From contig NC_068986.1 of assembly GCF_001194135.2 (NCBI RefSeq), forward strand, positions 90,779,130 to 90,843,129: a DNA stretch of 64,000 nt, written 5' to 3'. The notes beneath the pieces are model-generated. The model did no database searches and had not been told where the DNA came from. It worked only from the letters and a program-made list of their open reading frames with translations. Below are positions 6,267 to 57,068 of the stretch, piece by piece; positions within the stretch are counted from its first letter, which is position 1, and every line of letters begins with the position of its first letter. This stretch comes from Octopus bimaculoides (taxonomy: Eukaryota). The translations under genes were made by a program, and so were the position numbers.

Positions 6267-6777
6267 TCACTTTTCACTCTCTTTAGTTTGTTCACACTTT
6301 TCAGATTCCTTCCCAACATCCTGTAACTGCCATGGAGTATCTGACTCAGCAGAATGTAAAGATTCAGATGCTTGTGGGTTTTTATTATCAACAAGCTCTT
6401 CTGCCAGTTCTTGTTCTTCCACTTGTGGCTCTGTTGGTTGCATTTCAGCTTCCAGGGTTTCAATTTCTGTCAAGGGCTGCATCTCCAGCTGGGTCTGTTT
6501 TAATGGAACCCTCTCGGAATCTTCCACAGAAAGTTCACATATCTCTGGTGAAGAGGGCAAGTTGTGGGGGTTAGCTGTCTTGGCAGCTGGCGAGAAGGAT
6601 GGCACTTCTGGTGAGGGTAGAGGAGGCGAAGGCAGTGCAATTACCAATGGCTGAAAGTGGACTGAATTCATATTTGTAGGGTCTTGATGGTCCTGTGGTG
6701 AATTGGAAGACACCAACTGCAATGGCTCGAGACATATAGATGCAGATGCAGCAGCAGCTGCCTTTTCCTTGCGTTTT
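6267..6777 (-). CDS. EMI-domain membrane protein, coding exon 5 (cytoplasmic tail, stop)
   Basis: Polypyrimidine tract plus TTGCAG acceptor. Basic stop-transfer KRKEK, then the Pro/Ser-rich and acidic tail seen as ORF 6267..6722. Exons sum to 1020 nt = 339 aa plus stop. Confidence 0.88.
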
Positions 6778-8109
6778 CTGCAACAAAAGACAATGAATGA
6801 GAGAAAAACTGATCTGCATCTTGATATTCAAATTCAAAGACAAAAAAAAAAGATAGAACAAACTTTAGAAATATAGCTAAAAATTGTAAATTAAGAAATC
6901 TTTCGGAGAATCTACACAATCATTATAGATATCAAGCAAAAAAACATACTTTAATCAATCATCAATATTACAAAACAAAATCTCTTGATCTGATCTTTCT
7001 TGATCAACTCTTTAACTTTGCCAAAACTGCATCCCTACTTCCCCTAAAACAGATTTCCTCTTCATGGCCAGAAAATAATTCAATCCTCATCAATTGGTGA
7101 CCCTCTATGAAACTCGAACAAGATCCAAATTACAGTGCTCATATGTATAGAACAGTGTTTCTACTTTCAACTAAATACGTATCAGAGAACATGTAATAGA
7201 AAGCCAACCTATCAGTTACTAAAAACATCTTCATCAATGGGTAACAATCTCTGGTTAAAAAACATGTGTAATGATATCTATGTCTTCAACAATGGCTTCC
7301 ATTCCTCTGAACTGTACTACCTCAGTCTAAGTCTACATGGTCCATGAAGCTCACATTTTTCTATTCATTCTTACAGATTTGGTAAAGTGCTCTGAACCCT
7401 TTACTTAATCCATCCTTTGCCTAACTTTGGCCATGCAGTATCCCTCCTTCCCCCACACTATTCCTACTGATATCAACTTTCAGCAATTCATGTTGCACCA
7501 AAGAAACCTCACCAATCAAAGGTACTTCCTCTCCTGATGAAAAGAATTCATGAAAGCTAGATTTATTCAATATTTAGGTTGCAAACCCCAGAAAAATTAA
7601 CATATTTTAAAACCTATTTATGGAGCAGGAATAACTCTGAAAAAAGCTCAAAAAACTGTTACAAGCAAACTCTATAAAGTTTGCATCAAGAGTGTGCATG
7701 TGATGCAAAAGACAAACTAAAATATATAAATAATGCATGATAGCAAGACATAAGCACTAAGTGTGGAGGTTGGAGAGAGGAATCGAGCAAGATTCATTGG
7801 ATGTGTAAGGTTAATTTGCAGACAAAAGGTGGAACCAAAGCAATCTGAGAAATTAGTTAAGCATTAAAAAGGTGTTGGCTATTCAATGTTAAACTGAGCA
7901 GGAGTGCAATGTAATGTGTACCCATAGTAGACATTTAAAAAAAAAAAAAAACTGCTGGACCTCATAGCAGACTGAGAAGTATGACAATATGCAATACTTC
8001 ACAAGTGTCTAACCAATACCAGTATGAAAAAAGGGTAATGTGATTCCCAGTTGTCTGAGTATGTCAATGTTTAGAAAGACAGCTAAAAATAGTTGATAAC
8101 AATTAGTAT

Positions 8110-8264
8110 GATGGCGTAGCAAGAAGCTTGCTTCCCAACCACATAGCTCCAGTTTCAGTCCCACTGCGTGGCACCTTGGGCAAGTGTCTTCTACTATAGC
8201 CTAGGGCTGACCAAAGCCCTGTGAGTGGATTTGGTAGACGGAAACTGAAAGAAGTCCATATTGG

Positions 8265-8296
<32 letters not shown>

Positions 8297-8540
8297 TTAT
8301 GTTAGTCCCCCCCCCCNNNNNNNNNNTATATATATATATATATTTATGTTAGTCCCCCCCCCCCACCATCACTTGACAACTGATGTTAGTGTACTTACAT
8401 CCCCATAAATTTAGTAGTTCAGCAAAAGAGACTGACAGAATAAGTACTAGGCTTACAAAGAATAAGTCCTAGGGTCAATTTGTCCAACTAAAGGCAGTAC
8501 TATGGTATGACTGCAGTCAAATGACAAAGAAATAAAAGCA
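8110..8540 (+). mobile_element. tRNA-derived bipartite SINE, same family as 56852-57308
   Basis: Colinear head, CORE-like segment, microsatellite and tail. Confidence 0.8.
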
Positions 8541-9619
8541 TGTATCTTTGTGAGTTGAGTTCATTCTGATTTCAATACCAGGCTGAAGATATTTTGATTC
8601 ACATATCAACAGCCAAAAGAAAAATGTTCCTCTTAACCTACTAGAAGATCAATTATTCAGAAACATACTTCATCCCACTCATTTGTTGCATCCAACCCTA
8701 CTATCCCCATTCCTTCTTCCCCAGAATATCTGCTTTCTGAAATGTTCCTGCTCACACAGAACTTTAAAGGTATCGATCTAACCAGTCCAAGAGTGCCTGC
8801 AAGGACCACAAACTCTGGCCCTTCTAGACTCAATGAGTGAGTGAGCAACTAAGTATAGCCCTATGAGCTGGCAGAAACAAATGAAACCCACATATTTGCT
8901 CCCTGTATAAATAAGAATGCCACTGGTCTCAACTTTGGTATTCGTGTGTACAATTGTAAGGAGAAATCTCCACATCAGTTGGCATGAGTACCAGTAATAC
9001 AGAACAGCTGATTCAATCAACAAGACTCAAGCCCCTAGCTAGCCTAATTACACCTTCCATCAGAAGTCTTTTAACAATAGCATAATGACTTTACATTGAC
9101 CCAATATAACATTTATTGCTAAGCGGACATAGAATCAAGTCACTCTAATCATGACTATACAAACATAATTAGTTACAGTCTGTCTAGAAGTATATTAACC
9201 AATGTGACTTATTCTAAAGCTGAGGATGTGATTTAAGGGTGATTAGGTTGCTATTTCTAGCAGGTCAAGTGACCACAGAGGCTCTCCCATGGGAACTGGT
9301 GTAATGGATTGCATCAATCGCAGTACATACCTAGTACTTATTTTGCCAAGTTTGTAGGGACAACAGTCATAATCAATCCTAGCAGAAATAAAACAAAATA
9401 CTTTTAAGATAATTTGTCTTATACTCTTCACTTTCTACCAAATCACAACCTTTACAATATTGCCATTCCTAAAGGTAGCGAATTAAACATACTTTGAGAT
9501 GGGAGTAAATTACATGTTAAAGGATACAGATATGGCTGCATGATTAAGAAGTCCTCTTTACAACCCATTGGTTCCAGGTTCAAATCATCCCACAAAACCT
9601 TAAACAAATGTCTTCGGTA

Positions 9620-10892
9620 AGGTGCATTCCAGAAGTTTTGAGACTTTTAGAATAGGTAGTTCTGTCCTAGATAATTGTAATTTCAGTTTAGCATTACTAT
9701 ACATCAAATAAGCTGACCTGCCAACTTATTCTACATTGAAGAAGATGGCTAACAGCACTTTGAACACACCCTACTAAACACTGCACATTAGTCTGCAGAA
9801 TGCAGTCAGTGGATGAAGACAACTTGGAAGCTCACTCAATATGCAATAAAATCTTGTATTAAACTAGGCAAAATGCTACAGAAATTTATGAAATGCTCCA
9901 GACTGCTTATGGATTCACTTGCAGGAGCCAAGCATTTTTTTCTTTTTTTTGCTAGCATAAAAGGTTGCAGGAGAGTAGAGAAGAGGTAAGAAACAATGAG
10001 ATGTGACAGGGAGGTCAAAACATCAGAGCTGGTTGAAAAAAATTTGCTATTTTCTGGAAGAAGACCACCAAGTGTCTATAAAGACTAAGCCTGCAGTTTG
10101 GAGTTGAGGTGGCAACTGTACACAGAATTATCCATGAAGATCTGAGCATGCACAAAATTTATGCAAAGTTTGTTCCCAGGGTACTCAATGACAATCAGAA
10201 GGAAAGATGTGTTGGTGACAGCAGGGTGATGGTGGAGTTCATTACCTCCTATCAAAGATTAGAGTTTCTGGTGACCTGTGACAAAAGCTGGATCTACTTT
10301 CATGATCCAGAGACCAAGAGACAGAGTGCACTATAGAAGCAGCCTGGCTTCACCAGACCCAAGAATACTAATATTGATACCCTTTTTTAACATCAAGTGC
10401 ATCTGCTAGACAGAACCCAGTGCATATAGATAATGCCCAACAAAGTGTACTTTGAAGGTTTTGAGGGAGTTCAGGAAGAGATTCCCTTGCAAAAGGCCAG
10501 AGCTCCTCCATTCAGGTCAGTGGCCTCTGCACCAGGTCAATGCACTGCCCACAGTTACATCCTGGTGACCAACTACTTGACAGAGAGGGATATCAAAACT
10601 GTTCCTCACCCTCCCTACAGTCAAGACCTTGCTCTCTCTGACTTGATTGTTCCTCAAGCTGAAGGAGAGCCACGTGGGCAGTTGTTTTGAAGACTGAGAA
10701 AATGAAGAAGGCTGTAATAAGAATCCTGGGCTCCATCACCTTGAAGGGCTTCCATGAGAACTTCACAAAGAGGCTGGAGTACTAGAATAAGAGCATTAAA
10801 ATCTGAGGATCCTACTTTGAAGGAGATTAAAATTTTGTACTTTGAAATCAATATCTCTTTAAAAAGAGTCTGAAAATTTCTGGAATGCACCT
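9620..10892 (+). mobile_element. Mariner (DD34D) transposon, full length, inactivated
   Basis: About 1.27 kb. TIRs AGGTGCATTCCAGAAGTTTTGAGAC versus its imperfect reverse complement, TA duplications at both ends. Remnant motifs FVPRVL (WVPHEL), VTCDKSW (VTGDETW), HPPYSQDL (YSPDL). Confidence 0.9.
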
Positions 10893-12493
10893 TATGCCAT
10901 AGTCTTAGGCTGACCAATGCTTTGTAAGAGGAATTTAGTAAAAAGAAACTGTATAGAAGTCCATCATTACTTGTATCAGCATTCACTAGGGATTAAGATG
11001 AGCCAATTCCAGCCAGTGACTCCACAAACAGAAGCTCGTTATACCTGACAATCACAGATGTCTGACACTGCACACCACATTGCAAGAACCAGATATTGAT
11101 TCAAAATCAATGTTTTCATCACACTTATACACATATGCCTGTGCAGTGATAATGATGTAGCTTTCAAATGACAACCACCCAACTGTAATTTTGCAAGAAG
11201 TATTCACAGATAAAAAGACATTGATAAGCAATTCTCATTTTCATGTAAACACAATGCATAATTTAACCTCTTAAACTAAACCAACCTTTTTAATTTATTA
11301 TTAATAATTATCTTAATTATTATACTTCATTTATCTGCTTTATATAAATTTTCCTCATTTATTTGCTTTATGTAAATTTTCCACTGATAACACTGAAGGG
11401 AGGCAGAGTAAATGGGAGATAAAATGCGATTGAGATTTGTAAAAGAGTATAAAATGTTCCAGTGTGGGAAGATGTAAATTTAATCTTAGTATTTAAACTG
11501 GTCATATCAAGCCTAAATATTCTGTCTGGTGCTCAAATTACCAGCTCTGGCCTCTCACACTTGCTCTACAATGTCATTCAAAAATTAATCATTGAAATCT
11601 TGAAGCCATGAGACAATACATAATTCAAAACATTGTAAAATAAGCATTACATTTGATAGGGAAAACAAAGTTAAAAAGCATTTACTGACAAACCACCGCA
11701 ACCAGTACTAACTTTTACAACCAGATATCCAAGGTAGATCAAAAACTCAAAAAACAGATCAAACTTCAGTGATAAGCTTCCCAGATATGATGAAGCACAG
11801 ACAAGATTCTAAAATGTGTTGTATTGCATATTCTCTCAAACTTATTCTGGTTGTTCAAAGTTTGTTTGCTTTCTTGAAATAAGTTCACTTATCTGTACAG
11901 ATGGAACATCTATTTTAACTAAGACTAGTATTTAGCAGAGAATTCTATAAATGTATACATATTTAAAATATTTTAAAGAAATTAATGACATTTTTTTTTT
12001 TTAATATTTCAAAGCTTTCAATAAATTTCTGAGGAAATATATATTGGTAATTACAATTTCACAAACTTAAAATATTACATATAAGGTTCAATTATTTCCA
12101 AGTCAGCCAAGATTAAAAAAACTCATGATCAAAAGATCACCCCACATGTTCAATCATCTTTTTTATAAATCTAGCTACATAGTCCAACATGTCCTATTTT
12201 GAAGGATAGAAGAGTGCAATTTGAGGAAAATTGGATAATGCTTTTCTGCCAGGTTAAACTTCCACATTGTTTTGACTCTTATTCTACATATCAACAAGCC
12301 TAACCTTCAATTGTTCCAGAATCCTATAAATGCATATTTCAACTAGTTTCAACTCAAAATTTTTATTGTGAATGCAGACTTAACTCCAAGCTGAGATCAG
12401 TGGCATAATTACTAAAACTACTGAAATGTTAAAAGACATGAAAAAAAAAAAAATCTTTTCTTCATCCAAAAAGCACAAATAAATAAAACTTAC

Positions 12494-12623
12494 TTTTTCC
12501 AGACAGCTTTTACAATGAAGAACAAGATGATCATGATGAAGAAACTTGCACTGCAAATGGCAGCTAAGGTTCCAATAGAGAGTTCATGAATTGATGGTAA
12601 AGGCTTAGAGCCCTGAGCTAGTT
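12494..12623 (-). CDS. EMI-domain membrane protein, coding exon 4 (transmembrane helix)
   Basis: Acceptor TTGTTCTGCAG; LAQGSKPLPSIHELSIGTLAAICSASFFIMIILFFIVKAVWK; donor AA|GTAAGT. Phases match both neighbours. Confidence 0.9.
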
Positions 12624-13245
12624 CTGCAGAACAAGAAAAGTCACAGATTTGAAAATACATACATACCATTTAGATAGTATTTTGAAAGTACTGAGAAATT
12701 TGTAAATAGGTCTTAATTTTTTAGAGCGACTCAAATTTGCTATTATTTATAGCTACGTTTGCATTTGAGTAACTTAATAAAAAAATCACACTAATGTGTG
12801 TGTGTGCATACACACACACACACAAAATTTTTTTTTCAGTATAGCCTTGCTGAATAGTTAATTTGTATCATTTTACAATTGTGTCTTTCCAAGAAACTAC
12901 CATTTAGCACAGTCTGCAAACATCTTCAAGCATAACCTTTAGGTGATCAATGCCTGCAAATATAATTTGGTAAATAGAAACAGTGCAGAAAACTATCAGA
13001 CACAGATCTGCATAAATCCTTCACTAATATATACTAAGAAACAATGTAAACAGCAGTGAGTAAACCGACAAGCTGATATATATCTTAACATTTGAGGTTT
13101 CATTTTTTTTTTTTTTTCTGCTGAAGTGGCCGATGCTTCTTTGTTACTCTCTGGCTACTATAAAACAGTGAACCAGTGGTTGGCTTATTAGGAATATTCA
13201 CATTGTTCACAAAAAATACAATATTACGAGAAAAAGCAAACTTAC

Positions 13246-13349
13246 CAAAACAAGTTTCACTATCAGATTTAGCCCAGCCTGGACAACAGTCTAACACTGT
13301 GTGGTATATAGTTATATTTTGGTCATATCGTTTCAAACAAGTTGTTGTC
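13246..13349 (-). CDS. EMI-domain membrane protein, coding exon 3
   Basis: Acceptor TTTCCACTAG; TTTCLKRYDQNITIYHTVLDCCPGWAKSDSETCF, including the EMI C-terminal CCPGW motif and an NIT sequon; donor G|GTAAGT. Confidence 0.9.
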
Positions 13350-13882
13350 CTAGTGGAAAATATATAAAAAGGATGATGGACTTGTGGACAGGAATAAGCT
13401 TCTAATGATCATATTTTTAACACAGACATGAAATGCACACATGGCCTGTCAAGTGTTTGTTTTATATACCTCATTTATAAAAGTAGGTCACTAACAAGCT
13501 TTGTCCAAACAAGACAATGTAACAAGAACAATTTATTTTCACAGCAAAAAATTGATTAAAAAAGAAAAAGAGCATAAGTCAAATGCTATACTATTAACTA
13601 GATGCTTCATATGACAGTGGGAAGATACAACTATCTATTCTTACAATAGAGATTGATTGGAAGATGCTATGAGAGATCTAGACTCAATATTGTGCATGCA
13701 GCAAGACTTAAATTGCAAACTAATATCTTATTCTAAACAGCATTAAACAGTTGAATAACATGGTTAAAAAGATTTTTTTTTTTAATGTGTATAATTTTCA
13801 GAAATCTGGAGAGAAATTAAAGATACTAACAAAACTCAAATACAAGGAAAAGTTCAAATAAAAAGCTCATTGTATAACATAC

Positions 13883-14008
13883 TTGTAAAAAGTACACGAG
13901 TCCAAAGAAAAAAATCCACAACGAGTGACATATTTTTGAATGCATTTCTTTCTCTCAACAACTTCCCTTGTTTTCTCTTCCTTGACGCTCTTTTGGCACC
14001 ATCTTCCA
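13883..14008 (-). CDS. EMI-domain membrane protein, coding exon 2
   Basis: Acceptor CCCTTTGCAG; GRWCQKSVKEEKTREVVERKKCIQKYVTRCGFFSLDSCTFY; donor AA|GTATGT. The Y-x-T-R-C-G...C pattern is EMI-like. Confidence 0.88.
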
Positions 14009-20800: not shown

Positions 20801-23800
20801 AACTGTAGCTAGTCACTAACATAATTCAGAGTGACAAAATATTTAGCCTATGTGCAAGAACTAAGGAGTCATGTATACTGCTAGCAAGATTGGGTCCTTA
20901 AGGACATGAAAATTTCATAACTGCTAGTTATTGAATAAGTTGAACCTAGAATTTGAGAAGTGGGGAAAGTGTTTTATGCATGCATGACCATCACCCTTCA
21001 GAAATATAGATTGAAATATAGATTGCGACATGAATATTTATGTCTCAGAAGAATAAAGAATGTTAAGGGTTAAAACTAAATAGTGCACAACATTGAAACT
21101 GACTTTCTATGGTGCTATAACCAATATATAATCAATGAACTATGAATAAATAACACTTCAAAAGTGCTGCTGCTACTACTAACACAAGCTTACAAAAGCT
21201 GGTACCGTTAATTAAATCAACTACCCCTTCCCACACACACACATATATATATATATACTACCAGCAATACACAGGGTTGAATGAATTCAGCCCAGTGTAT
21301 TCCTCCTTTGCAAAGATTGGTCTTGTGCCAAACAAAGAAAAACCACACTTAAACATTAAAATAATGTAATGAGATTAAAACATACTATATGTGTGCATGT
21401 GTGTGTGAGAGAGAGATCATACCTTAAAATTCTTAATTGATAATCTCAGATCAATATTGTAGCAGTTTGCATGGCTATCTTTTAAGACATCATGACTGCA
21501 CAAATTGAATATAGGACAGTGCAGCATTCTGGACATTATGCTGGGTCTGCTGGTGCTAGCAATATTCTGCCTGTCTATATCAGAATGTATTTTATATTTT
21601 ATTAAAAACGATGAATCCAACAAAGCACATTTTTGTTAGACTCCTTGTTAAAACATAAATGCTCACACTGAGTATCTTTATTCTAAGCAACCCATGTTCT
21701 TATGAACAGGTAACCCCAGGACTGTAATATGCTATTATATATATATATATATATATATATCTCAATCCATCCATAGAAACCATGCAAAAGGTGATGACTG
21801 GAGCCTGGTACAGCCCTCTGGCTTGCTACCTCCTGTTAAACTGTCCAACTCACCAGTATAAAAAACAGACATCAAAGGATGATGATGGTGATATATATTT
21901 ATTGTTTCTGTCATTGGATTGTGCCCATGCTGGGACACCACCTTGAATAGCTTAATTGAACAAATCAACCCCAGTACTTGCATTTAAGTCTCGTACTGAT
22001 TTTATTGATCTTTTATCAAAGTCCTAAGTTACAGAGACAAACAAACCAACACCGGTTGTCAGAGAGTGGTGGGGGACAAACACAAAGGAATACATACGCA
22101 CACACATATATATATATACATATATACATGATGAGGACATGTGAAAGCTTGAAAGAAATTAAGCCAGCATGCTCTGGTAGCAGACAATAGGACTGAAACT
22201 ATGAAGTTAGGAATCAAACTTAACCAAAGAGCAATGCTTGTGTGTATATATTTTATCTTTCTCTGGTTTCAGGCATAAGACTGCAGCCATGCTGGGGCAC
22301 CACTTTGAATTTTAGTCAAACAAATCAACCCCAGTACTTATTGTTTTGGAGCCTGGTACTTATTCTATCAGTCCCTTTTGCCAAACTGCTAAGTTACAGG
22401 GACACAAACACCAGTTGTCAAGCAATGGTGGGAGACAGAAACAAAGACAAACATGCACATACACACACAATGTTATATCCAATGTATTGCTGTAAAATTG
22501 GGCCCCATAAGGTTTTTATCAGTAGCTTTGTATGAGGCTTGAACCAAAACCTACAGATTTTTTTTTTTAGCCCAACAATATGCAAAAGAGTTTTAGAGGT
22601 GACATAACCCTGTAAATGCAATTTATGTAAGAGGGTAATAAAAGCTGATACAGGACTGATACTGCAGTCCTCAACTGGTACTAGGCTTTCCAATGAAAAT
22701 CTCATGTAGAAATGGCATCATAAAATGCACCAAGTCAATACTGTAATATTATTGCCAATTGGAAGGCAATGAGTCATAAGAAAACATCAATTCACAAAAA
22801 CTAGGAGATTCTTTGCTGTTTGTGCCAAATGATGAAGGATTGAGACAGGTGATGAAACACTGTGGTACTAATTCAATCAATACACCAGAATGGGAAATAC
22901 TGCTCTAAACAGATACACATAGTAACTTTATGTGAATGTATATACACATACACATCATCATCGTTTAACGTCCGCTTTCCATGCTAGCATGGGTTGGACG
23001 ATTTGACTGAGGACTGGTGAAACCGGATGGCAACACCAGGCTCCAATCTAATTTGGCAGAGTTTCTTCAGACTAACCATTAAACAATCTAAACACTTGCT
23101 TGGGTGCACCAGTCTTTTCTTCCTAATACTGGATTTATCAGGAAGCAAACGGCAAATAAGTCTTTTCTTTTAAAAAGAAGTATTGACAATTTGCCTTTTA
23201 ATTGTTACCCTAGTTTAAAACAATTTGCTTATATTGCTGTTATTAAACAATTCTGTGGTGGCTGACCAAGGGATATTGTTTCCAAACTTCGCTAACTAAT
23301 GCTTCTCGCCTCCTTGTCAACATCCCCATTCCCCCAATATTCATATACATACATCTAATATCAGACCAGAGTAATTTAAATCCGGGTTTGACGATGCCGT
23401 TGCTATTATAGTCAACGCAGTTCACCAAGATAATACACTAAAAAAAAAAAAAAAATTATACATAAGCACAATTTACTTAGTGAGTGCAACACCCAGTTTT
23501 CCAAGAGGATGCTCAAAGCATTTTCATTGCCTCTGCCCCACCCCAAAAAAGAAAAAAAATTAGAGGACGCACTTGCACCCCCTGTTCCAGAGCCTATGTA
23601 ATAAGTTAATATTATATAGGAGCAAAATCATTTGAGAGCTATCCCATCTCCTTCGCTAGAATTTGATCCTGAAAGTGTATGGTTGTGATTCCGCGCACGT
23701 GCTTGCATGTGAAAAGGTTTGCGTATAAACACGCACACGAGTGAGCGAGCGAATAAGGAAGTTAACGCACAGATTGGGGATGGGTCAACTTTCCAGTGTT

Positions 23801-25989
23801 CCAGTTTTAAGTAGCTGACAATAAAAGAGAAACGGTCATGTGTTTTGTAAGGAGGATTTTTACCAGATTGAATGTCCTAAGAAATTTGCTGGTTATTGAA
23901 GAAATGAGTTGATTATGCACAAATAATAAAGAATACTATTTTAAATTTTCATCCACAATTGATTTATCAGTTTTTGTTAAAAATGTTTTTTTTTAAACTT
24001 TTTCCGCCCACGCACTTCCTTTACTACAAAACTGAACACATGCATCCTATCACGGGATTCTGTAACAAGAGCAAAAAAAATAAATAAACAAACAATTAAA
24101 TGTCATTTCCCCACACACCCGATTCACCTCATACATTTTTCTACATGTACCCTTCGGTATTTAGACAACTTTTAATATATAACGTTACATCTGCTTTGTA
24201 ACTCAGGTGAAACGGATGTCTCGTGTAGTTGTTTATAGGAATAAAAGGGAAAATGACTGTAAATCATTGTAGATGTAGCTTTATTTTTCAGACATTTCAA
24301 CGAGCAATAAAGCGACGAAAGGAGAGAGATTAAGTTTGTGACGTAAACATGGAATATGTAAGGTTAATGAGTTAATGAATACTTATTAACTCTCGTTACA
24401 GATCATAATGTGACAAATACGAGATGAGTCAGCTTCTACGTGGATTTTCGACCTGCTAGAAATAGGTACCAAATCTCTAATTCACACACCACCTATCTTG
24501 GAAAAGGACAATGGATAAGGTGGTCCTGGGTTCCCTGGACATACGAAATTGACGGGAGGATAACGGCCGGAATTTCTTTGTTTTATCAGAGCTGACCGTG
24601 GGTTGAACAACACACACTAGTGATCTTTAATGAATATAATTTTGAAAGTTTTTCCTATGTTACAAAGCCACATATTTATGGGGAGGGATGTAGTCGATGG
24701 ACTAGATTCATTTGCACTTTATGAGGATAAAAATATACTTCAGAAAATAAAATAAAAAGCTAAACGAACGTCGGCGATGAGACTTTTTTTTTTTTTGTTA
24801 ATATTAGCAAAGGGTTACAAATGTGGTGTGTGGTGGAACGGGAGTAGGGGCAGTAAATTCGATTAAACTTTCTCCAGTAAATGCGTTGAGGGGAGAAACT
24901 GAATCACTAAACTCATACATCAGCACGTGAGAGTGAGTATGCAAAGACACTCCTTAAGAACAGTTCAATGACCGTTAATCATACACCGTATACAAAATCT
25001 GCATGATGCAATATTCGACACACTGGATAAAAAAACTGGAGGGATTAAAGTCAGTGATTAAGTACAAGGCTACATTTGTGAGAAAGAAAGAGAAAGGAAA
25101 TGAGAGAAGCGAATATGAAAGTGGTTCGTATATAACTTTTACTCGTTTCAGTCATTGGACTGAGGCTATGTTGGGGCACTGCTTTGAAGGATTTAGTCGA
25201 ACAGATCGATCCCAGTACATATATATTTTTCTAATCTGGTACATTCTATCGCTCTCAAACCGGTGTTACGGTGACGTAAACAAACTATCACTGGTTGTTA
25301 CGCAGTGGTGCCGAAGGGGCAATAGTTAGAAGCACCTTCCCAAGGTTGAAAAGCGAAGATCTTTTCAACACCTAAATTATGAATAAGGAACAGTGAAATA
25401 CGGAGCTATTTAAGAAATCATTTTCAAAGAGGGTACAGTGTGACTTGGGTGTTATTTCTACCAGGTTGAACGATTCCTTGAGGATGGGGTAGGGAACTTC
25501 ACTAGAACCAAGGGTTAAGTGCAAGAACTTATAGACTATGAGCAAAGCTGAATTTACTATTAAGAAAAATAAGCAGGCAGGTCAACAAATAAAGAAAAAG
25601 AGAAGCAGAATATTTTTCCAGTGTTGAACTTTAGTGCACACACTCAAGCAGTCTTCCTGCAATTTCCATCTGCCAAATTCATTCATATGGTACAGGCTGG
25701 CCCAATACTATAGAAGACACTTATCCAAGATGTCATAATACATCTTTATTTAAAATTCTAAAACAATTTGACACTAAACCGAAGGATTACTAGATACTCT
25801 TTAGCAGAGTACATGTAAATTTTTACAAAGATGGCAAACAAGCTTAAACTTCGAAGTTATCCTCTCACAGAGAAGATAAAACTTTGTGAGGAATGGTGAT
25901 ATGCGGTGCTTAAGAAAATCCTGCCAGCTATGCTAGCATGGGAAAACTGAGGTTCTGAAAGCATAATGCGTGTGCACACAACAGTCAAG

Positions 25990-26570
25990 CTTGCACCTTT
26001 TTCTTATATATCATCATTTAGCGTCTGTTGTCCATGCTGACATGAGTTGGCCAGTTTGACTGGGCTGGCATGCTAGAAGGTTGCACCAGAATCCAGTCTG
26101 ATTTGGCATGGTTTTCTACAGCCGAGTGCTCTTCCTAATGCCAACCACTCCAAGAGTGTAATGGATGCTTTTACGCACCACTGGAATAGGTACCATTTGC
26201 ATGACACTAGGGTGCATTTACATGCCACCAGTACAGATGTCAATTTGCGTCACTTATCTGCTACAACTGCAATTTTGCGCAGTTCAATAGGTCTTCTCTA
26301 GCACAACATAATGCCAAAGGTCTTGGTCATTGCCTCCAAGAGGTCCCCATGCTTGAAACGAACTCAGCCACTTCGCCTCTGTGAGGCCCAACATTCAAAA
26401 GATGTTCTTTACGTGCCACCAACACAGCTGCACATGGCTTGTCAGGTCCTCTCAAGCACAGTACATCACTAAAGGTCTCAGTCAGCAGTCACTGCCTCTG
26501 TAGGGCTCAATGTTTGAAGATCATGCTTCACAACCTTGTCCCTTGTCCTCCTGTGTCTACCTCTACCACA
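25990..26570 (-). mobile_element. Degenerate RTE LINE 3' end
   Basis: Partly duplicated homologues of the GRPRKTW...TEAM region followed by the shared RTE/SINE tail. Confidence 0.65.
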
Positions 26571-27237
26571 GGTTACCTCCACAAATTATTCTCAGATTAC
26601 AATAATAGTTAGCTACTTTTCGTGCATTTGAAAACATTGAAATTTAAAGAGTATAGAAGATTACATAATTCAAATGAAATTCATAGACGGAATACAATCA
26701 GTTGAATATCATGTAAATCATTAAAAAAAAATCTTCAATCAAAACTTAATACAGTGGAAGTTCAGTTTAACAAATACCTCTCAACATGAGCAAATCGGTT
26801 TGTGAACAATTTTTTAAACACAAATATTTCAGGTGATGAACAGTGTCTCGAGTAACGAACATGCAAGCTGGCAACGACAGTTGGTGATAAGCTGGGAGTA
26901 TCAAAGGGAGATAGTTCCTGCTGAGGTTCTACTATGGGGAAAAATAATTTTGGTTTATTAACATTTCAGGTGAAAAAGCCTTCGGGTAAAATTTAAATTT
27001 GTTAACAGGTTCCACTGTACAGGCATTGAATTTATACAATAGCATGAAATGATTTCTAAATTTCAAATAACCAAATTGAAAACACAAATATTAGGGTGGC
27101 CTTGATATTGCGACATGTTGATAAAAGAATAAACCTGGTTCTAAGCATTGTTTTAGTGGATATAAGCATAACCCATCAAAATATCCAGTCAGTGGTTAAG
27201 TAAATTAAATTTAATATAAACATTTATTTTCAAGCAG

Positions 27238-27486
27238 TTTGTAAATCCACAAAAGCAGTTGAAGGATTTGAAAATAAGATTTCAAGGATTCATGAAATCG
27301 GTTGAAAGCAATACTAAAATGACCAAAGCAAAAGTCAATCTTAATGTTAAGATGCAATTTATCACTGACAGTGAGATAACTGATATCTCAAAAGTGGATT
27401 GGTTTTATAAACCAAAATGCAATCACAAGTTAAAACAATTTGTTCCATCATACATTGATATTTTGGAGAAACTTGAAGCACTTGTT
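27238..27486 (+). other. Candidate exon or decayed coding remnant with weak C1orf109/AIRIM-like similarity
   Basis: 83 open codons between TTTTCAAGCAG and GTGAGC. NL..MQ...D...F...K...KQ...DILEKL aligns by eye to C1orf109 as recalled. No downstream exon was found. Confidence 0.3.
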
Positions 27487-30400
27487 GTGAGCATTATTGT
27501 TACTGGTTTATTTGTTATAGGAGGATGAATATCAAAAATGTTCAACATTGATTTATGAGATGTACATTCCAGGGGGAGATTACCTAAACTGATGCAAGTA
27601 GAAAAAGGTACATTAGAAATACTTCCAGAAGATGGACATCATATCATGATAAGTAACTATAGCTGAAGCAAGTTGCTAGGCATGGCTGTGCAATTAAGAA
27701 GCTCTCTTTGCAACCATGTGGTTTCAGGATCAGTCTTGGGCAAGTGTCTTCTATTATAACCCCTAGCTGACAAGTAGCTTGCGAGTGAATTTGGTAGAGG
27801 GAAACTGTGTAAGCACCCATTGTAGGTCGCTGTTTAAGAACTGGTGTTGGTTTCTTTACATGTCCATAACTTAGTGGTTTGGCAAAAGGGACTGATAGAA
27901 TTGAAAAAGACTTGAAAAATTGGGTACTTGAGTAGATTTGTTTGACTAAGCCAGTCAAGGTGGTGCCCTAGCATCACCATAGTCCAATGACTGAAACAAG
28001 TAAAAGAAGGTAGAAGAAATATAGAAAAGGAAACCTTGAAAACTGTATGGTGCACATAAAAAGCAAAGCATTTTCTCTTTGGTCAAATATTTCAATTGGC
28101 CTCACTCAGTACAGAAATGGTGATATGAAATAAGATGCAACTTCTGCTTTTATTAATTACAGCAGCAGAATAATACAGCAAATAGGAGAGTAATGGAGGG
28201 ATGAGTAGGGATAGGAGTGGGGTTAGGGCAGCAAGAGTGTTGGGGAGAGTTGGAGAGGAACATAAGCAAGGGTGCAGATGGTCAATGCTAAATGAAGTGG
28301 GCAGTGACAATGCTAAAAATAAGGCTGGATGTCAAAAGGAATTCGCTCAAGAGTGGGACCTAGCAGTCTATTGTTGGGATAAGAGAAAGCAGGTGTAAAC
28401 TTGACAGGGACATTAAGGGATCCAGTTGTGTGCACACACATTATGCTTTTGGAACCTGTTTCCTTATACTGTATGGATTGTCATATCACTATCTTCTGTC
28501 TTATCTCTATGAGGTTCAACATCTTGAGATCAGTCTTCCTGTCTTCCCAGATTTTCTACTTACACAGGTTCCATCTACAGTAGTCATGGACACTTCATAC
28601 AACTAGCTTTATCCATATGCACCACATTCCCAAACTGAGTCTTTTCTCATGCACAATACATCTGATTCCTAATAGCATATCCTTAAGAACTTATTAACAT
28701 GAGGTTGAACGTGATGATGCTGTTGAACTTGATAATGCTGATGTAGAAACTAGTGTTACAAATGTGAATTTATAAAATTGGAAACCACCCATGATAATAT
28801 TTCATCTGAGTATGTTCAAAAATTATTTTTAATTCAAGCAATTGTTTAGTTGCTGAAAGGCTGTTAAAGTCACTGAAAATTAATAGAATAAAACTGGAAT
28901 TAAACTGAACAGAGTTATTAAGAACCATTTTGCTGAAACAGTGCTCCAGAAGTAGTGTTTGACGAAGCCAGTAAATATCAATGAAATATGTGTATTGGTT
29001 TAATAAAATTGGATGTAAACCTAAGACCTTTACATCATCCAAAGAGAAACACTGACACAATAGTCAAAAGTTTTAAAATGAGTTTCAAAGCTTAATCATA
29101 AAGAAATCAAATTATTTTAACTGGAGATCACATCTGCAAATTTGATATATTCAGATCAATCCAGAAGTTCTGAGGTATTACCACCAGAAAGAGACAACTG
29201 CCTGTATCAACTTGCATCTGAATATTGAATATCTTTTTTTTTTTACTAATCATTTATAGCATTTCTTTAGGAAAATTTCGTAATTACTAGTAGGATCATT
29301 TACAATTTCTTCAAAGTCTTTTGTGGAATTACAAACTACCCGGAATTTTTTAAACCAAATTTAATGTTATGCTGCTAGATAGTTTGATGGTATAAGTAAA
29401 GCAACATTTGAACTTGGTTTATAACTGTTTCTACTTCCATTTATGTTCTAGTTATGCACTCACTCTGCCCGATCCTCTGTATCGCTTAACACCTGTTTTT
29501 GCCCTTCTGTCATAATTTAACATCTCATCACCTAGCATAAATCCCCTTCCCTCAATACAACACCCAGCTCATTTGGAGGATCTAATTTTGTGAGTTACTT
29601 GGCGACCTCACTAGTGCCAGTACCACATAAAAATCATCCAGTGCATTTTGTAAATTGATTGGCATCCAGTCATAGAAACCACCAAAGCAAATACTGGGGC
29701 TTGGCTTAATTCTCTGGCTCACCAGCTCCTGTTGAACCATCCAACCCACCTTGGAAAACAGGTGTTAAATGACAATCATAATGCACATTTGCACTATAAA
29801 AATTAAACAATACCTCACTCCGGAAAACTTGATCCATCTGCTTTGAATGGTAGACAGATATAATCACAACATCTTATGAAATTACAGCTATTTGGTATGG
29901 GCAATAAGAGAAATTAACCAAAATGTATTTCAAGTATGCAATAATAGTTTTGGCTCTTAAAAGGTATACTTGCTCATGCAGATCAAATAAACAGGCATAA
30001 ATAAGAATCAGTCTGTCAAACATTGACTTATATTCTAGATTACTAAGAAACACTAATTTTGATTTTACAACTGATACAGGAACAAGCATTGCAAATGATG
30101 TTCGACACTGTTCTTGAATAAAATAATCATTTATCGTCCATGCTGACATGGGTTGGACGGTTTAACCAAGTTTGGTAAGATGGAAGGCTGCACCAGACTC
30201 CAGTCTGATTTGGGATGGTTTCTTATGGCTGGATGCCCTTCCTAATGCCAAACCACTCCAAGTGGTTTCAGGAAAATGTAAGGTCATTGTTACACTAATA
30301 ATATTACATTGCTACATGCATTTCTCATTGCTTATCTATGATCAGGACTAAGTGTGGTCACTAGCTTCATGTCAGAGGGCTCAGCTATTCAGTAGAATTG

Positions 30401-31244
30401 AACTTTAATGTAAGAAAAACACACACAGAGACTACAGCTGTAAGTGTATAAAGCTATTATTAGCTTACACACACACACTTTTCATGTTTACTATATCCAT
30501 GCTGGTATGGGTTAGAGAGAAGTTATTGAAGCCATATTCTACAACTTCCCATAATTAACATTTGTTTTTAGATAAGGTGTCTATTGTACTGGTCTTCACA
30601 CATGGGTTATGGGGACAAACTGTTTATGAGATATAAATCCTGTCATTGTTTTTATTCACATGGTGACAATGTGAAAACATGTGGAAATGCACAATGAGTT
30701 TCTGTACAGTTTCCATCTACCAAATTTTATTCCCAGGCTCAAGACTATAAAGGGTACTTGTACAAGGTGGCATGCAATAGGATAGAACCCAAAGCTACAT
30801 GGTTGCAAAGCAAACTTCTTAAACAGCCAAGCATTTAGACAAAGAGAGACAAGAAATGTACCTGTGCCTATAAACGTTTGTGTATGTTTGTATCCTTATT
30901 TTACACACAGTCATATGTTGGCATGGGTATGGTAGTACAAGATTCAGACCTGAGGTTATGTGTTCCCCCAATGTTACATTTTTGGCTATGCTCTCTACAA
31001 TAGTTTGTTGCTCTTCCTGATACCAACCAGTTTACAAAGCTTACTAATGAACCTTCTCAAACCCTGCGTTATTGCTGCTTAAATTGATACCATTTACAGA
31101 ATGTACTGGGTATTTTATGTAGCACCAGCACTTTTGGAGTCGCCTTGTAGCTGGCAAAACGAAAGAGGTCACATGGTGGAAGGAACACAGTAAAAGAAGA
31201 AAGTGTTAGGGCTGGATTAACAGAGGCAGAGCGATGGATTAAAC

Positions 31245-31565
31245 CAGGAGTTTTCAACCTTTTTTTTTTTTTCATCTATGGACCTCTTTATTATTCTGGG
31301 TTTAAAAAACTAGTTTTATAAAAACTTTCAAAATTCCTATTTTTTCAAGCATCAACTTGTGTAAGTTGAACTACGTAAAATGTTAGAGAAAGAAACCTAA
31401 TTGTTTCATGCAATACACACCAATACATACATCTCAAGTAAAATAACTTTCAGGGGCCCTGAAAATACAATTGTGTACCCCCAATTGACTATTTTGTTAT
31501 GTGGACCTCCAAAAATCTTGAATGGACCCCAAGTAACCATATTGGACCCCGGTTGAAAACCACTG
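31245..31565 (+). mobile_element. hAT (Buster/Charlie-type) MITE
   Basis: Ends CAGGAGTTTTCAACC / GGTTGAAAACCACTG. 8-bp TSD GATTAAAC/GGTTAAAC with central TA. Confidence 0.85.
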
Positions 31566-32087
31566 GGTTAAACGAAGTAGTAATGGAACGGGTTGAGTAG
31601 ATGGACTCAGGATGGGTCAGTCTATCTACGAGTTCGTCAGAGTCCAAAACAGTTACTGATATTACAAGTTTTTTGCTGAGAGAGGGTTGTTGGGGAGAGA
31701 CCAACAGAGTGTTATAGAAGTGGGTAATAGGAGAGAAAATGAAAAGTAGTATCAAGAGGTTAGTGAGAGAGAGACAGTGGTTAAGCGAAGAGAGAGTAGG
31801 GAGGTGTGAAGGTACAGCATGGGCAATAGGAGGGGATGCATGCACATAACAGAGGAGAAGTGCATCCACTAAATTTCTGCAGGTCAAATCTTCGGTGACA
31901 CATTTCGCCTGTTGAACAGTCTTAGGTCATCTCCGTCAAATGTAACATTAACGTCATTTTCACCACTTCAACCCAAATCTTTTCTCTCTCTCTCTCTCTC
32001 TCTGGTAACCATTCACTTTGAGCCCTTGGTACTTAACTAATGCATCCAATTTCTTTTTTGTGTGTGTGCGGTACAAATTTGGATTGG

Positions 32088-32121
<34 letters not shown>

Positions 32122-32372
32122 CGCGATATATACAGAAAGAAAAATGTATACACAGAAATAAACGAGTAGAGAGCAATGTAACAATTGCAATACAGAAGAA
32201 TATTTAACTATCGTATAGCAGACGACTTGCTATTACAATGTAAATATCATAGTATGAAATGAAACTACGAAACTGAATTCTCTCAGACACGAGATGCATA
32301 GTTTCGCAGAATTAAAAAAAAAATAATAATAACTTGCCAATATATGAATAATAAAATTCAGTTCCAACTTAC

Positions 32373-32521
32373 TGTGATTCAGTGGCCGACAATGCTGGAA
32401 GTTGGGACAAACATACGAGCACAATAACAATAACTTTAGTGGATCGTGCACAGCTACCATGCAATGGAGCTATAGACGACAGCGTGTCTAGTAGAATTTG
32501 GGCACAACAGTTCTTGTTCAT
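32373..32521 (-). CDS. EMI-domain membrane protein, coding exon 1 (signal peptide)
   Basis: AAACC-ATG at 32521; MNKNCCAQILLDTLSSIAPLHGSCARSTKVIVIVLVCLSQLPALSATES. Hydrophobic core plus ALSA-T cleavage-like site. Strong donor CA|GTAAGT in phase 2, matching the exon at 14008. The join spans 18 kb, so it is inferred. Confidence 0.7.
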
Positions 32522-33509
32522 GGTTTATCTGAAGAGAAAAAGGCTATCTTTTGTATAAGCTCCAGGCAACGTGAACATTACCTTGGGAAATGCGTTGAAT
32601 AAGTGTTGAAGTGTTGAATAAGACGACACCAGTTTCCACAAGAATATAGAACGTCGTTAGTTTAAAATAAAAAATTACTAGTATTTTGAGGAATGAGCGA
32701 CTGGACTCAACAACAGGGTTTGGAATTAGGGTTAGCGAATAAGTTTTTTACAGGTAATAGAGTTCTCCTTAGATATAGTCCTTTCTTATCACGCGAGTCT
32801 CACAAGGTATATCCGTTCTTTTACAATACAACCACTGGTGCACTAAATGTGGGGTGTCTTTTGTCGTGAAGTCTTGACTGCAAAACTCCTCTTCGCTAGT
32901 AGAAGACAATTCCAGTTCCATATAATCTTACAGGAAATTTCCTATCTTTTCTTCTACAAAAATCTCAAAATGTGTGTGTATAAACACAAAATACTCTGCA
33001 AGACATAGCAGATATGTAAACTAGGGGTTGAGTCCAAACACAAAAATGAATAAAAATAAGACAACAAAATAGTCAAGAATTATATAATTAGCAGGGTTGT
33101 CTATTAAATTTAGACTTGGCTTCTTCAAATTTCTTTTTCCTTCTTATCAATATTTCATGGCTCCAATTCAATAATGAAATTAAGATTCGAACATCCTTCA
33201 CTACCAGTTCGTTTTACCTTTCGATAACGGAATTACATCTGTAATACTGCTCTGTTTACGAATGACTAAGAATTTGTAACTAAAAACGAAGCAATAAAGA
33301 GAAGACTAGTTTGTTTCGTTGTTTTTGAGTACGGAGTTCGTCAATTTGAGTTTCTAACTCTTCGACGAAGTTGTGAGTTCTGTAACATTGGCTTCCTCCT
33401 CTGATCAGCTTAACAACAAGTGCTCGATACGTTAATTCAGCGACGTGGTTTTCATAAATAATTACATGCCCCGAATAGCGTTTGGTTACTAAACTACAAA
33501 TACCCTGCC

Positions 33510-56851: not shown

Positions 56852-57068
56852 TACTCTTTTACTTTTTTACTTGTTTCAGTCATTTGACTGGCCATGCTGG
56901 AGCACCGCCTTTTACTCGAGCTAATCGAACCCAGGACTTATTCTTTGTAAGTCTAGTACTTATTCTATCGGTCTGTTTAGCCGAACCGCTAAGTTACGGG
57001 TACGTAAACACACCAGCATCGGTTGTCAAGCGATGTTGGGGGGGACAAACACAGACACACAAACATAT

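What the first reader, a model, noticed from the sequence alone, without database searches (positions are those of the whole stretch)
6267..32528. Unannotated-looking receptor whose ectodomain is a single EMI-like domain
Seen: five phase-compatible exons give signal peptide, an 8-Cys EMI-like domain (C...C..Y.TRCG...C..Y...C...CCPGW...C), a stalk of about 17 aa, one TM helix and a 170-aa tail. Established: EMI domains on membrane proteins (CED-1/Draper/MEGF10/NimA) are normally followed by EGF repeats, and secreted EMILIN/multimerin/periostin carry other modules. Inference: an EMI-only type I receptor is an unusual minimal architecture, possibly a lineage-specific adhesion, engulfment or decoy receptor. 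Four of the five exons are invisible, in whole or in frame, in the ORF track.
Basis: partly seen in the sequence, partly recalled or inferred. Interest (0 to 1): 0.72.

Follow-up and report, generated by a model that had tools for sequence, protein, structure and literature searches.

The report
Octopus membrane protein with one EMI-like domain
The five exons are a real, already annotated Octopus bimaculoides gene for a small cell-surface protein that carries a single divergent EMI-type cysteine-rich domain; it belongs to an unstudied family found across molluscs, which makes it a modest curiosity, not a surprise.

Summary
The five minus-strand exons have GT/AG borders and compatible phases. 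They translate to 339 aa, identical over the full length to RefSeq XP_014771182.1 (LOC106869812 isoform X2, Octopus bimaculoides). So the gene is annotated, and UniProt calls isoform X1 an "EMI domain-containing protein". The N gap (8317-8326) lies in intron 4 between exact 37-bp duplicates and touches no exon.

The protein has a signal peptide, an 8-Cys domain, a 17-aa stalk, one TM helix, a polybasic stop and a disordered acidic tail with no tyrosine. The only extra exon (9378-9331, isoform X1) adds 16 cytoplasmic residues, not an EGF repeat.

Pfam EMI is matched end to end but below threshold (19.5 against 25 bits). Profile comparison ties the domain at 98.4% probability to oyster sequences that do pass that threshold.

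An exhaustive HMMER search found only 31 cluster representatives. Every named one is a mollusc (cephalopods, gastropods, bivalves, a chiton). The 28 I aligned share the same core of EMI, stalk and TM.

None of those 28 has EGF repeats or NPxY/YxxL motifs, so CED-1-type engulfment signalling is unlikely. A surface adhesion or ligand-capture role is the best inference. Function is untested. Interest is low to moderate.

The parts
32373..32521 (-). Coding part of exon 1 (ATG 32521-32519; aa 1-49 plus 2 nt). It encodes a long n-region and the signal-peptide hydrophobic core VIVIVLVCLSQLPALSA. An AG acceptor-like site at 32530-32529 suggests that an untranslated exon lies upstream. This was not verified.
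   Evidence: Kyte-Doolittle 1.9 for residues 28-48. The donor is GTAAGT. Relatives carry a classical short signal peptide at the same place.
13883..14008 (-). Exon 2 (aa 50-91): the N-terminal half of the EMI-like domain, with Cys 54, 72, 80 and 88 (RWC...C..Y.TRCGFFS...C).
   Evidence: Pfam EMI aligns to aa 52-118. In the 28-sequence AlphaFold2 model, pLDDT is 89-97 over residues 51-110 and 86-91 over 111-130.
13246..13349 (-). [quoted passage not shown]
   Evidence: A sequon lies between C5 and CC in 25 of 25 relatives, and the Cys spacing is nearly invariant.
12494..12623 (-). Exon 4 (aa 127-169): the stalk ELAQGSKPLPSIHELS, the TM helix IGTLAAICSASFFIMIILFFIVKAV and the start of the polybasic stop (WKK).
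   Evidence: G144 and A147 are invariant and I149 and K169 are nearly invariant in the 28-sequence family alignment. Model pLDDT is 85-95.
9331..9378 (-). Optional 48-nt cassette exon of RefSeq isoform X1. It inserts IDYDCCPYKLGKISTR just after the TM helix on the cytoplasmic side. It is phase-symmetric and flanked by AG and GTATGT.
6267..6777 (-). Exon 5 coding part (aa 170-339 plus TGA at 6269-6267). It holds KRKEK, an Ala run, and an acidic tail rich in Pro, Ser and Glu that contains PPLP/PxxP motifs and no Tyr. The tail is predicted to be disordered.
   Evidence: pLDDT is below 50 over most of residues 193-339.
8317..8326 (.). Assembly gap of 10 N inside intron 4. It is flanked by an exact 37-bp duplicate (8280-8316 equals 8327-8363) within an interspersed repeat. 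It has no bearing on the coding sequence.

Best explanation
This is the annotated O. bimaculoides gene LOC106869812. It encodes a 339-aa (X2) or 355-aa (X1) single-pass type I membrane glycoprotein.

Proposed working: a signal peptide directs the N-terminus into the ER. One divergent 8-Cys EMI domain (aa 52-126, N-glycosylated) is then held about 17 residues above the membrane. The TM helix has a face of small residues (G144, A147, A148, S151, A152). A polybasic juxtamembrane helix follows, and then a disordered acidic, proline-rich tail.

The gene belongs to a mollusc-wide family. In that family only the core of EMI, stalk, TM and polybasic stretch is conserved. Stalk length (about 16 to 130 aa) and tail (1 to 170 aa) vary freely.

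Inferred mechanism: the EMI domain acts as a surface-displayed protein-binding module for cell adhesion or ligand capture, as EMI does in NimA and PEAR1. Any output passes through lateral TM or juxtamembrane contacts (self-association, a partner protein, or the cortical cytoskeleton). It does not pass through CED-1-type phosphotyrosine signalling.

Shown: the gene model, the architecture, the family and its distribution, and the absence of EGF repeats and Tyr motifs.
Inferred: signal-peptide cleavage, glycosylation, and all of the function.
For: Gene model:
- Identical to XP_014771182.1.
- The isoform X1 cassette is cytoplasmic.

Domain:
- Pfam EMI covers profile positions 2-68 of 69 at aa 52-118, E=0.0018.
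- Oyster P0035 and P0037 pass the Pfam EMI cut-off (25.8 and 27.1 bits). I counted in them the same spacing, C-x17-C-x7-C-x7-C-x7-C-x16-CC-x10-C.
- hhalign of the family domain against these two gives 98.4% probability, E=4e-15, over 77 gapless columns.
- UniProt labels several members 'EMI domain-containing protein'.

Family:
- 31 representatives among 1.84 billion. All 14 named species are molluscs, from four classes.
- In the 28-sequence alignment, seven Cys plus G144 and A147 are invariant. The first Cys is invariant among the 25 members with a complete domain.
- The sequon is present in 25 of 25, which supports a lumenal, extracellular position for the domain.

Structure: the 28-sequence AlphaFold2 model gives pLDDT 89-97 for the main beta-hairpin of the domain (86-91 at its C-terminal end), 85-95 for the TM helix, and below 50 for most of the tail.

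[quoted passage not shown] EMI is a singular, N-terminal protein-interaction domain (PMC11949838).
Against: - The Pfam gathering score is not reached. Only 2 of 28 members reach E<=0.01, and the family consensus does not hit EMI.
- No structural match to any solved structure. Foldseek's best E is 0.2, and the hits are generic beta-hairpins. No PDB sequence matches either.
- The C1xxxx[S/T] O-fucose motif of canonical EMI is absent in Octopus and present in only 9 of 25 relatives.
- No expression, localisation or binding data were available.
- No signal-peptide or topology predictor was available.
- The cephalopod-like orthologues have 50-80 residues before the hydrophobic core, which is unusual for a cleaved signal peptide.
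Confidence: 0.6

Rival explanations
1. It is a membrane-tethered trap or decoy. The EMI domain sequesters a secreted ligand at the cell surface, or after shedding of the ectodomain, in the way EMILIN EMI domains are reported to bind secreted growth-factor precursors. No signal is sent inward.
For: Only the ectodomain and TM helix are conserved across the family. Tails range from 1 to 170 aa and share no strong motif. The stalk LPSIHELS is invariant in cephalopods, which would fit a processing or contact site. The EMILIN ligand-binding precedent comes from my own knowledge and was not checked here.
Against: The TM helix and polybasic segment are more conserved than a passive anchor needs to be. 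No ligand is known, and no protease site was identified.
Confidence: 0.2
2. It is an auxiliary single-pass subunit or chaperone of another membrane protein such as a channel, receptor or transporter. The conserved TM helix does the docking, and the small Cys-rich ectodomain modulates the partner.
For: The TM and juxtamembrane residues are nearly invariant between octopods and the other cephalopod-like sequences, while the rest has drifted to 38% identity. A small-residue G/A/S face is conserved family-wide: G144 and A147 are invariant and I149 nearly so.
Against: This rests on analogy alone. Small-xxx-small motifs are common in single-pass proteins, and the weak Pfam hits to EphA2_TM and Cadherin_C_2 fall below their cut-offs. 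No partner is indicated by anything in the window.
Confidence: 0.12
3. It is a CED-1/Draper/MEGF10/NimA-type engulfment receptor, either a truncated paralogue or an isoform.
Against: There are no NIM or EGF repeats in either isoform, in the gene span, or in any of the 28 relatives. The Octopus tail has no Tyr, and no relative has NPxY or YxxL. These motifs are present in all three reference receptors (PMC8092387). The exhaustive profile search did not retrieve MEGF- or Draper-type proteins at E<=1e-3.
Confidence: 0.04
4. The Cys-rich domain is not a true EMI domain. It is an independent beta-hairpin module that merely shares a CCPG motif.
For: It scores below the Pfam threshold. The consensus fails to hit EMI. 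It has 8 Cys where canonical EMI has 6-7, and the O-fucose motif is not conserved. There is no structural confirmation.
Against: The Pfam alignment runs the full length in register. The hhalign link to sequences above the Pfam cut-off is 98.4%, with identical Cys spacing by my count. The domain sits N-terminal and alone, and has the characteristic CC, as described for EMI (PMC11949838; bioRxiv 10.64898/2026.05.13.724420).
Confidence: 0.08

Closest known systems
Nimrod/MEGF engulfment and adhesion receptors (CED-1, Draper, NimA, MEGF10, PEAR1)
   Same: They are type I membrane proteins with one EMI-type domain at the N-terminus, directly after the signal peptide. In NimA and PEAR1 the EMI domain is needed for adhesion (PMC13076899).
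   Different: Here no NIM or EGF repeats follow the EMI domain. The ectodomain is about 90 residues, against hundreds in those receptors. The tail lacks Tyr, NPxY and ITAM/YxxL. The domain has 8 Cys with a fixed x7 spacing and scores below the Pfam cut-off.
EMILIN/Multimerin/EMID (EDEN superfamily) secreted matrix proteins
   Same: They carry a single N-terminal EMI domain with the CC motif, used for protein-protein interaction (PMC11949838).
   Different: Those proteins are secreted and carry coiled-coil, collagen or gC1q modules, and their EMI domain has the C1xxxx[S/T] O-fucose site. This protein is membrane-anchored, has no other module, and lacks that site (K59).
Uncharacterised mollusc proteins of the same family, for example XP_052227079.1 (Dreissena), XP_064612673.1 (Liolophura), KAK6192221.1 (Patella), XP_034337177.1 (Magallana gigas) and the Argonauta hians protein Ahia01_001268500
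   Same: They are collinear: signal peptide, 8-Cys domain with the same spacing and sequon, stalk, TM helix containing G-x-[YFL]-A-[GA]-I, and a polybasic stop.
   Different: Cephalopods have CCPGW where the others mostly have CCPGY. They also have a very short stalk, a much longer acidic tail, and no PDZ-ligand-like C-terminus.
Minimal single-cysteine-rich-domain receptors (for example BCMA and Fn14 of the TNF receptor superfamily), as an analogy of design only
   Same: One small disulfide-rich domain on a short stalk, one TM helix and a short or unstructured tail.
   Different: The fold and family are unrelated. This comparison comes from my own knowledge and was not tested here.

Membership tests
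EMI domain (Pfam PF07546) | Score at or above Pfam's gathering cut-off (25 bits) | tested here: not met
   The score is 19.5 bits, E=0.0018. Only 2 of 28 relatives reach E<=0.01. The family consensus gives no EMI hit at E<=1.
EMI domain (Pfam PF07546) | End-to-end alignment to the domain profile | tested here: met
   Profile positions 2-68 of 69 align to aa 52-118.
EMI domain (Pfam PF07546) | Homology to sequences that do pass the cut-off | tested here: met
   P0035 and P0037 pass (25.8 and 27.1 bits). The cephalopod profile finds them at E=2e-4 and 5.6e-4 in 1.84 billion proteins. hhalign gives 98.4% probability over 77 gapless columns.
EMI domain (Pfam PF07546) | Characteristic CC followed by PG[WYF] and a last Cys; a single copy at the N-terminus after the signal peptide | tested here: met
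   C113-C114-P-G-W...C125, with the domain starting at W53-C54 after the signal peptide. The criteria come from PMC11949838 and bioRxiv 10.64898/2026.05.13.724420.
EMI domain (Pfam PF07546) | C1xxxx[S/T] O-fucosylation motif | tested here: not met
   Octopus has K59 at that position. The motif is present in 9 of 25 relatives. It is described as only partially conserved in human EMI domains (PMC11949838).
EMI domain (Pfam PF07546) | EMI three-dimensional fold and disulfide pattern | tested here: inconclusive
   The model is confident for the domain (pLDDT 86-97). Foldseek against the PDB gives only generic hairpins (best E 0.2). No library of predicted cellular structures was available, and the model coordinates could not be inspected for disulfides.
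CED-1/Draper/MEGF10/NimA receptors | NIM and/or EGF repeats after the EMI domain | tested here: not met
   There are none in isoforms X1 or X2. No EGF-like stop-free segment lies in 6000-33000. None occurs in the 28 relatives.
CED-1/Draper/MEGF10/NimA receptors | Cytoplasmic NPxY and/or YxxL/ITAM tyrosine motifs | tested here: not met
   The Octopus tail has 0 Tyr. No NPxY or YxxL occurs in any of the 28 tails. The criterion comes from PMC8092387.
CED-1/Draper/MEGF10/NimA receptors | Single-pass type I topology | tested here: met
   There are two hydrophobic segments only: the signal core at 28-48 and the TM helix at 143-167. A KKKRKEK stretch follows the TM helix, and a conserved sequon lies in the ectodomain. 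No dedicated topology predictor was available.
EMILIN/Multimerin (EDEN) | A secreted protein with coiled-coil and gC1q (or collagen) modules after the EMI domain | tested here: not met
   No other Pfam domain was found, and a TM helix is present.
Mollusc EMI-stalk-TM family (unnamed) | Collinear signal peptide, 8-Cys domain (x17, x7, x7, x7, x16, CC, x10), sequon, stalk, G..A/G-containing TM helix and polybasic stop | tested here: met
   Octopus has the modal Cys spacing, shared by 15 of 25 members.

The most novel reading that the evidence does not exclude
Molluscs have kept, in four sampled classes including chitons and cephalopods, a minimal receptor in which one EMI domain on a stalk is the whole ectodomain. 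If that domain alone is enough for adhesion or ligand recognition, the family would be the simplest natural system for defining what an EMI domain binds and how. Signal output would go through a conserved TM and polybasic segment, not through tyrosine motifs.
Probability: 0.3. Interest if true: 0.5.

Novelty: new variant of a known kind. Interest (0 to 1): 0.3.

Why it matters
EMI domains are known on large multi-module proteins: matrix EMILINs and multimerins, and MEGF/Draper/NimA receptors. In those proteins it is hard to separate the contribution of the EMI domain from that of the other modules.

A conserved family in which a single divergent EMI domain is the only extracellular module shows that the domain can serve on its own at the cell surface. 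It also offers a compact protein for binding, adhesion and structural studies.

For genome annotation, the result groups a set of mollusc 'uncharacterized' or 'hypothetical' proteins into one family with clear defining features. It does not open a long-standing question, and no function is demonstrated.

Tried and rejected
- Word-indexed protein search with the trimmed cephalopod alignment returned nothing, not even the query's own proteins. The search with the 28-sequence alignment returned only six known members. Neither extended the family.
- Foldseek of both AlphaFold2 models against the PDB found only long beta-hairpins of pore-forming toxins and flagellar rings, at E>=0.1. I rejected these as geometry matches with no homology.
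- PDB sequence searches with two profiles gave no hits.
- Pfam on the family consensus gave no EMI hit. The only hits were sub-threshold, TM-driven ones (EphA2_TM, TMEM154, SIT, Cadherin_C_2), which I treat as generic single-pass similarity.
- A scan of the gene span on both strands for Cys-rich stop-free segments, to look for hidden EGF exons, found only microsatellite-derived or patternless segments.
- Literature searches for the locus names, for 'EMI domain' together with molluscs, and for the run accessions of the orthologous transcripts turned up nothing on this family.
- Rfam and tRNA scans of the window found nothing.
- Pfam on three repeat-like ORFs elsewhere in the window found nothing.
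- I considered and rejected the idea that the model is a fragment of a larger EGF-bearing gene. The RefSeq isoforms, the intronless orthologous transcripts and all 28 relatives agree on the short architecture.


Full report
**1. The observation**

Reading the minus strand at the stated places shows five exons with canonical borders:
- 32521-32373, beginning with ATG in an AAACCATGA context and followed by GTAAGT.
- 14008-13883 (AG before, GTATGT after).
- 13349-13246 (AG before, GTAAGT after).
- 12623-12494 (AG before, GTAAGT after).
- 6777-6267 (AG before, ending in TGA).

Joined, they give 1020 nt with no frame break and a 339-aa product. That product is 100% identical over its full length to XP_014771182.1, 'uncharacterized protein LOC106869812 isoform X2 [Octopus bimaculoides]'. 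It is 95% identical to an O. vulgaris protein of the same length. The gene is real, and it is annotated. UniProt names the isoform X1 entry (A0A0L8HMG1) 'EMI domain-containing protein'.

**2. The assembly gap**

The ten Ns at 8317-8326 lie in intron 4, 1540 nt from exon 5 and 1005 nt from the optional cassette exon. The 37 bases after the gap are an exact copy of the 37 bases before it, inside an interspersed repeat that has other copies in the window. This looks like two contig ends that overlap and were not merged. No exon or reading frame depends on continuity across it.

**3. Further exons**

Isoform X1 (355 aa) differs by 16 residues, IDYDCCPYKLGKISTR, inserted after W168-K-K. I located this as a 48-nt phase-symmetric cassette at 9378-9331, flanked by AG and GTATGT. 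It is cytoplasmic and juxtamembrane, not extracellular.

A scan of 6000-33000 on both strands for stop-free segments rich in Cys found nothing EGF-like, and nothing at all in intron 3.

Three cephalopod-like orthologues come from short intronless contigs of sequencing-run assemblies (1.5-3.2 kb). One of them is seen in 127 blocks of the collection. They must be cDNA, because the octopus gene spans 26 kb. They are collinear with the octopus protein, with no insertion, across all four exon junctions. I could not look at octopus RNA-seq reads directly.

**4. Anatomy of the protein**

- Residues 1-29: a polar n-region.
- Residues 30-46: the hydrophobic core of a signal peptide.
- Residues 52-126: eight cysteines (54, 72, 80, 88, 96, 113, 114, 125) and one sequon (N103-I-T).
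- Residues 126-142: a short stalk.
- Residues 143-167: the only other hydrophobic stretch, with Kyte-Doolittle up to 2.83.
- Then KKKRKEK and an Ala run.
- The remaining 169 residues are acidic (31 D/E against 12 K/R) and rich in Pro and Ser. They carry PPLP/PxxP motifs and contain no tyrosine.

With a 28-sequence alignment, AlphaFold2 gives pLDDT 89-97 over most of the Cys-rich domain and 86-91 at its C-terminal end. It folds as a long beta-hairpin (53-79 and 87-113) plus a small one. The TM helix scores 85-95 and continues into the polybasic segment. Most of the tail scores below 50.

The exons map onto the modules. Exon 1 is the signal peptide, exons 2 and 3 the domain, exon 4 the stalk and TM helix, and exon 5 the tail.

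**5. Is the domain EMI?**

By Pfam's own standard it is not quite EMI:
- PF07546 aligns end to end (profile 2-68 of 69), but at 19.5 bits against a cut-off of 25.
- Only 2 of 28 relatives reach E<=0.01.
- A consensus of the family does not hit EMI at all.

Three things argue that it is a divergent EMI domain all the same:
- It has the hallmarks described for EMI. It is a single copy at the N-terminus, it starts at WC, and it has the characteristic CC followed by PGW and a last Cys (PMC11949838; bioRxiv 10.64898/2026.05.13.724420).
- The exhaustive search retrieved two oyster sequences (P0035 = XP_052690908.1, and P0037) at E=2e-4 and 5.6e-4 in 1.84 billion proteins. These pass the Pfam cut-off (25.8 and 27.1 bits). 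By my count they share the identical spacing C-x17-C-x7-C-x7-C-x7-C-x16-CC-x10-C.
- hhalign of the family domain against those two gives 98.4% probability over 77 gapless columns.
- UniProt's automatic annotation calls several family members EMI domain-containing.

Differences from canonical EMI:
- It has eight cysteines, not six or seven.
- The C1xxxx[S/T] O-fucose site is lacking in Octopus (K59) and present in only 9 of 25 relatives.

Structural confirmation was not possible. Foldseek against the PDB returns only generic hairpins, PDB sequence searches are empty, and no library of predicted cellular structures was on hand.

**6. The family**

A profile of the cephalopod core (EMI, stalk, TM) was scored against 1.84 billion cluster representatives. 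Only 31 reached E<=1e-3.

Every one that carries a name is a mollusc:
- Cephalopods: Octopus bimaculoides, O. vulgaris, Argonauta hians.
- Bivalves: Dreissena, Pinctada, Potamilus, Crassostrea/Magallana.
- Gastropods: Patella, Haliotis, Elysia, Arion, Bulinus, Babylonia.
- A chiton: Liolophura.

All are 'uncharacterized', 'hypothetical' or 'EMI domain-containing'. The unnamed ones come from run assemblies and cannot be placed.

Twenty-eight of them align as signal peptide, the 8-Cys domain, a stalk of about 16 to 130 residues (mucin-like and alternatively spliced in Babylonia), a TM helix beginning L-S-x-G-A-Y-A-G-I, a polybasic stop and a tail of 1-170 residues.

Conservation:
- Seven of the eight Cys plus G144 and A147 are invariant in all 28.
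- The first Cys is invariant in the 25 members with a complete domain.
- G116, I149 and K169 are nearly invariant.
- A sequon between the fifth Cys and CC is present in 25 of 25. A second sequon, before the last Cys, is present in 20 of 25.

None has an EGF repeat. So the 'EMI-only' architecture is not an Octopus oddity. It is an old, conserved design across molluscs. Canonical MEGF- or EMILIN-type proteins were not retrieved at this threshold, so the family is a distinct, divergent branch. More distant relatives in other phyla cannot be excluded with a cephalopod-only profile.

**7. How it most likely works**

Shown: the architecture and what is conserved.

Inferred from it:
- The domain faces the outside. 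This follows from the signal peptide, the conserved sequons, and the positive charges after the TM helix.
- It is the functional head, since it and the TM segment are the only parts under family-wide constraint.
- EMI domains are protein-protein interaction modules (PMC11949838). [quoted passage not shown]
- The most economical reading is therefore a surface adhesion or ligand-capture protein.

It is unlikely to signal like CED-1, Draper or MEGF10. Each of those carries a tail tyrosine in an NPxY or ITAM/YxxL motif (PMC8092387). The Octopus tail has no tyrosine, and none of the 28 tails has either motif.

The TM helix with its small-residue face is strongly conserved, as is the polybasic juxtamembrane helix. 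This suggests that whatever happens on the inside goes through lateral association or the membrane cortex. Binding of polybasic juxtamembrane segments to ERM proteins is a known precedent, but that comes from my own knowledge and is untested here.

I put about 0.9 on the identity and architecture and about 0.35 on the adhesion or ligand-capture mechanism. Rivals that remain open are a tethered or shed ligand trap and an auxiliary subunit of another membrane protein. An engulfment receptor of the CED-1 type and a gene-model artefact are both unlikely.

**8. Novelty and verdict**

The gene and its relatives are in public databases, but I found no paper on them. The architecture is a stripped-down variant of a known kind, EMI-headed type I membrane proteins. 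It comes with its own 8-Cys flavour of the domain and a distribution that, so far, is mollusc-only.

That is useful for annotation and offers a neat minimal system for studying EMI domains. It is not very surprising, and no function is shown. Interest is 0.3.

Noticed in passing
window 8280-8363: The 10-N gap is flanked by an exact 37-bp direct duplicate (8280-8316 equals 8327-8363). The duplicate consists of a TA run plus TTTATGTTAGT plus a C run. This is probably two overlapping contig ends left unmerged, so the true sequence is likely about 47 bases shorter.
   Followed up: yes
window 8358-8475; 56929-57044 (-); 22311-22392 (-): The sequence to the right of the gap is an interspersed repeat with at least two other copies in the window, at 79-82% identity. 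The window also holds ten N gaps in all, most of them next to TA or TG microsatellites.
   Followed up: partly
window 32529-32540 (-): A polypyrimidine tract plus AG (ttttctcttcAG) sits 7 nt upstream of the start codon. Exon 1 may therefore be preceded by an untranslated exon further upstream.
   Followed up: no
window 60469-61032 (-) and 63285-63557 (-): Two ORFs of 187 and 90 aa are clearly related to each other: EWVLLPTYFRKRVANVRIGRV...AWLVAAVMHRMEDEVKIMKITRIKKVN against EWVLLQTYCGKRVVRVRVGKV...TWLVAAVMNNMEEDAKILRVTRTKRVN. Neither hits any Pfam family. They are probably a repeated mobile-element ORF.
   Followed up: partly
window 42315-42500 (+): An ORF beginning MLHGSETWAVTAEDIRKLARNEASMLRWM runs into an N gap. 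From memory it resembles the C-terminal part of retrotransposon reverse transcriptases, but it has no Pfam hit.
   Followed up: partly
P0004-P0006 (orthologous transcripts, loci L001-L005): The cephalopod-like orthologues carry 50-80 extra residues, including a conserved CRKC, before the signal-peptide hydrophobic core. In two of them no internal Met could serve as an alternative start. This is odd for a cleaved signal peptide and might mean an uncleaved anchor or a regulated start.
   Followed up: no
family members P0009, P0011, P0014, P0016: Four of the 28 relatives end in ETDI, ESEI, ESVV or ETNI. Two are named bivalves (Dreissena, Pinctada) and two are unnamed run-assembly sequences. The endings look like class I PDZ-binding motifs. 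Cephalopods and most gastropods lack them. Many gastropod tails share an [ST]-[EQ]-[KQ]-M-[IML] motif instead.
   Followed up: no
P0023 versus P0024 (Babylonia areolata isoforms): The two isoforms differ by a 106-aa Thr/Ser/Lys/Gln-rich repeat (DKTQTS...) inserted in the stalk. In this family, stalk length is therefore varied by alternative splicing of a mucin-like segment.
   Followed up: no
window 9331-9378 (-): The cassette of isoform X1 puts a CC pair (IDYDCCPY) right after the TM helix. Juxtamembrane cysteines are common palmitoylation sites (my own knowledge). I found no independent support for this isoform outside RefSeq.
   Followed up: partly
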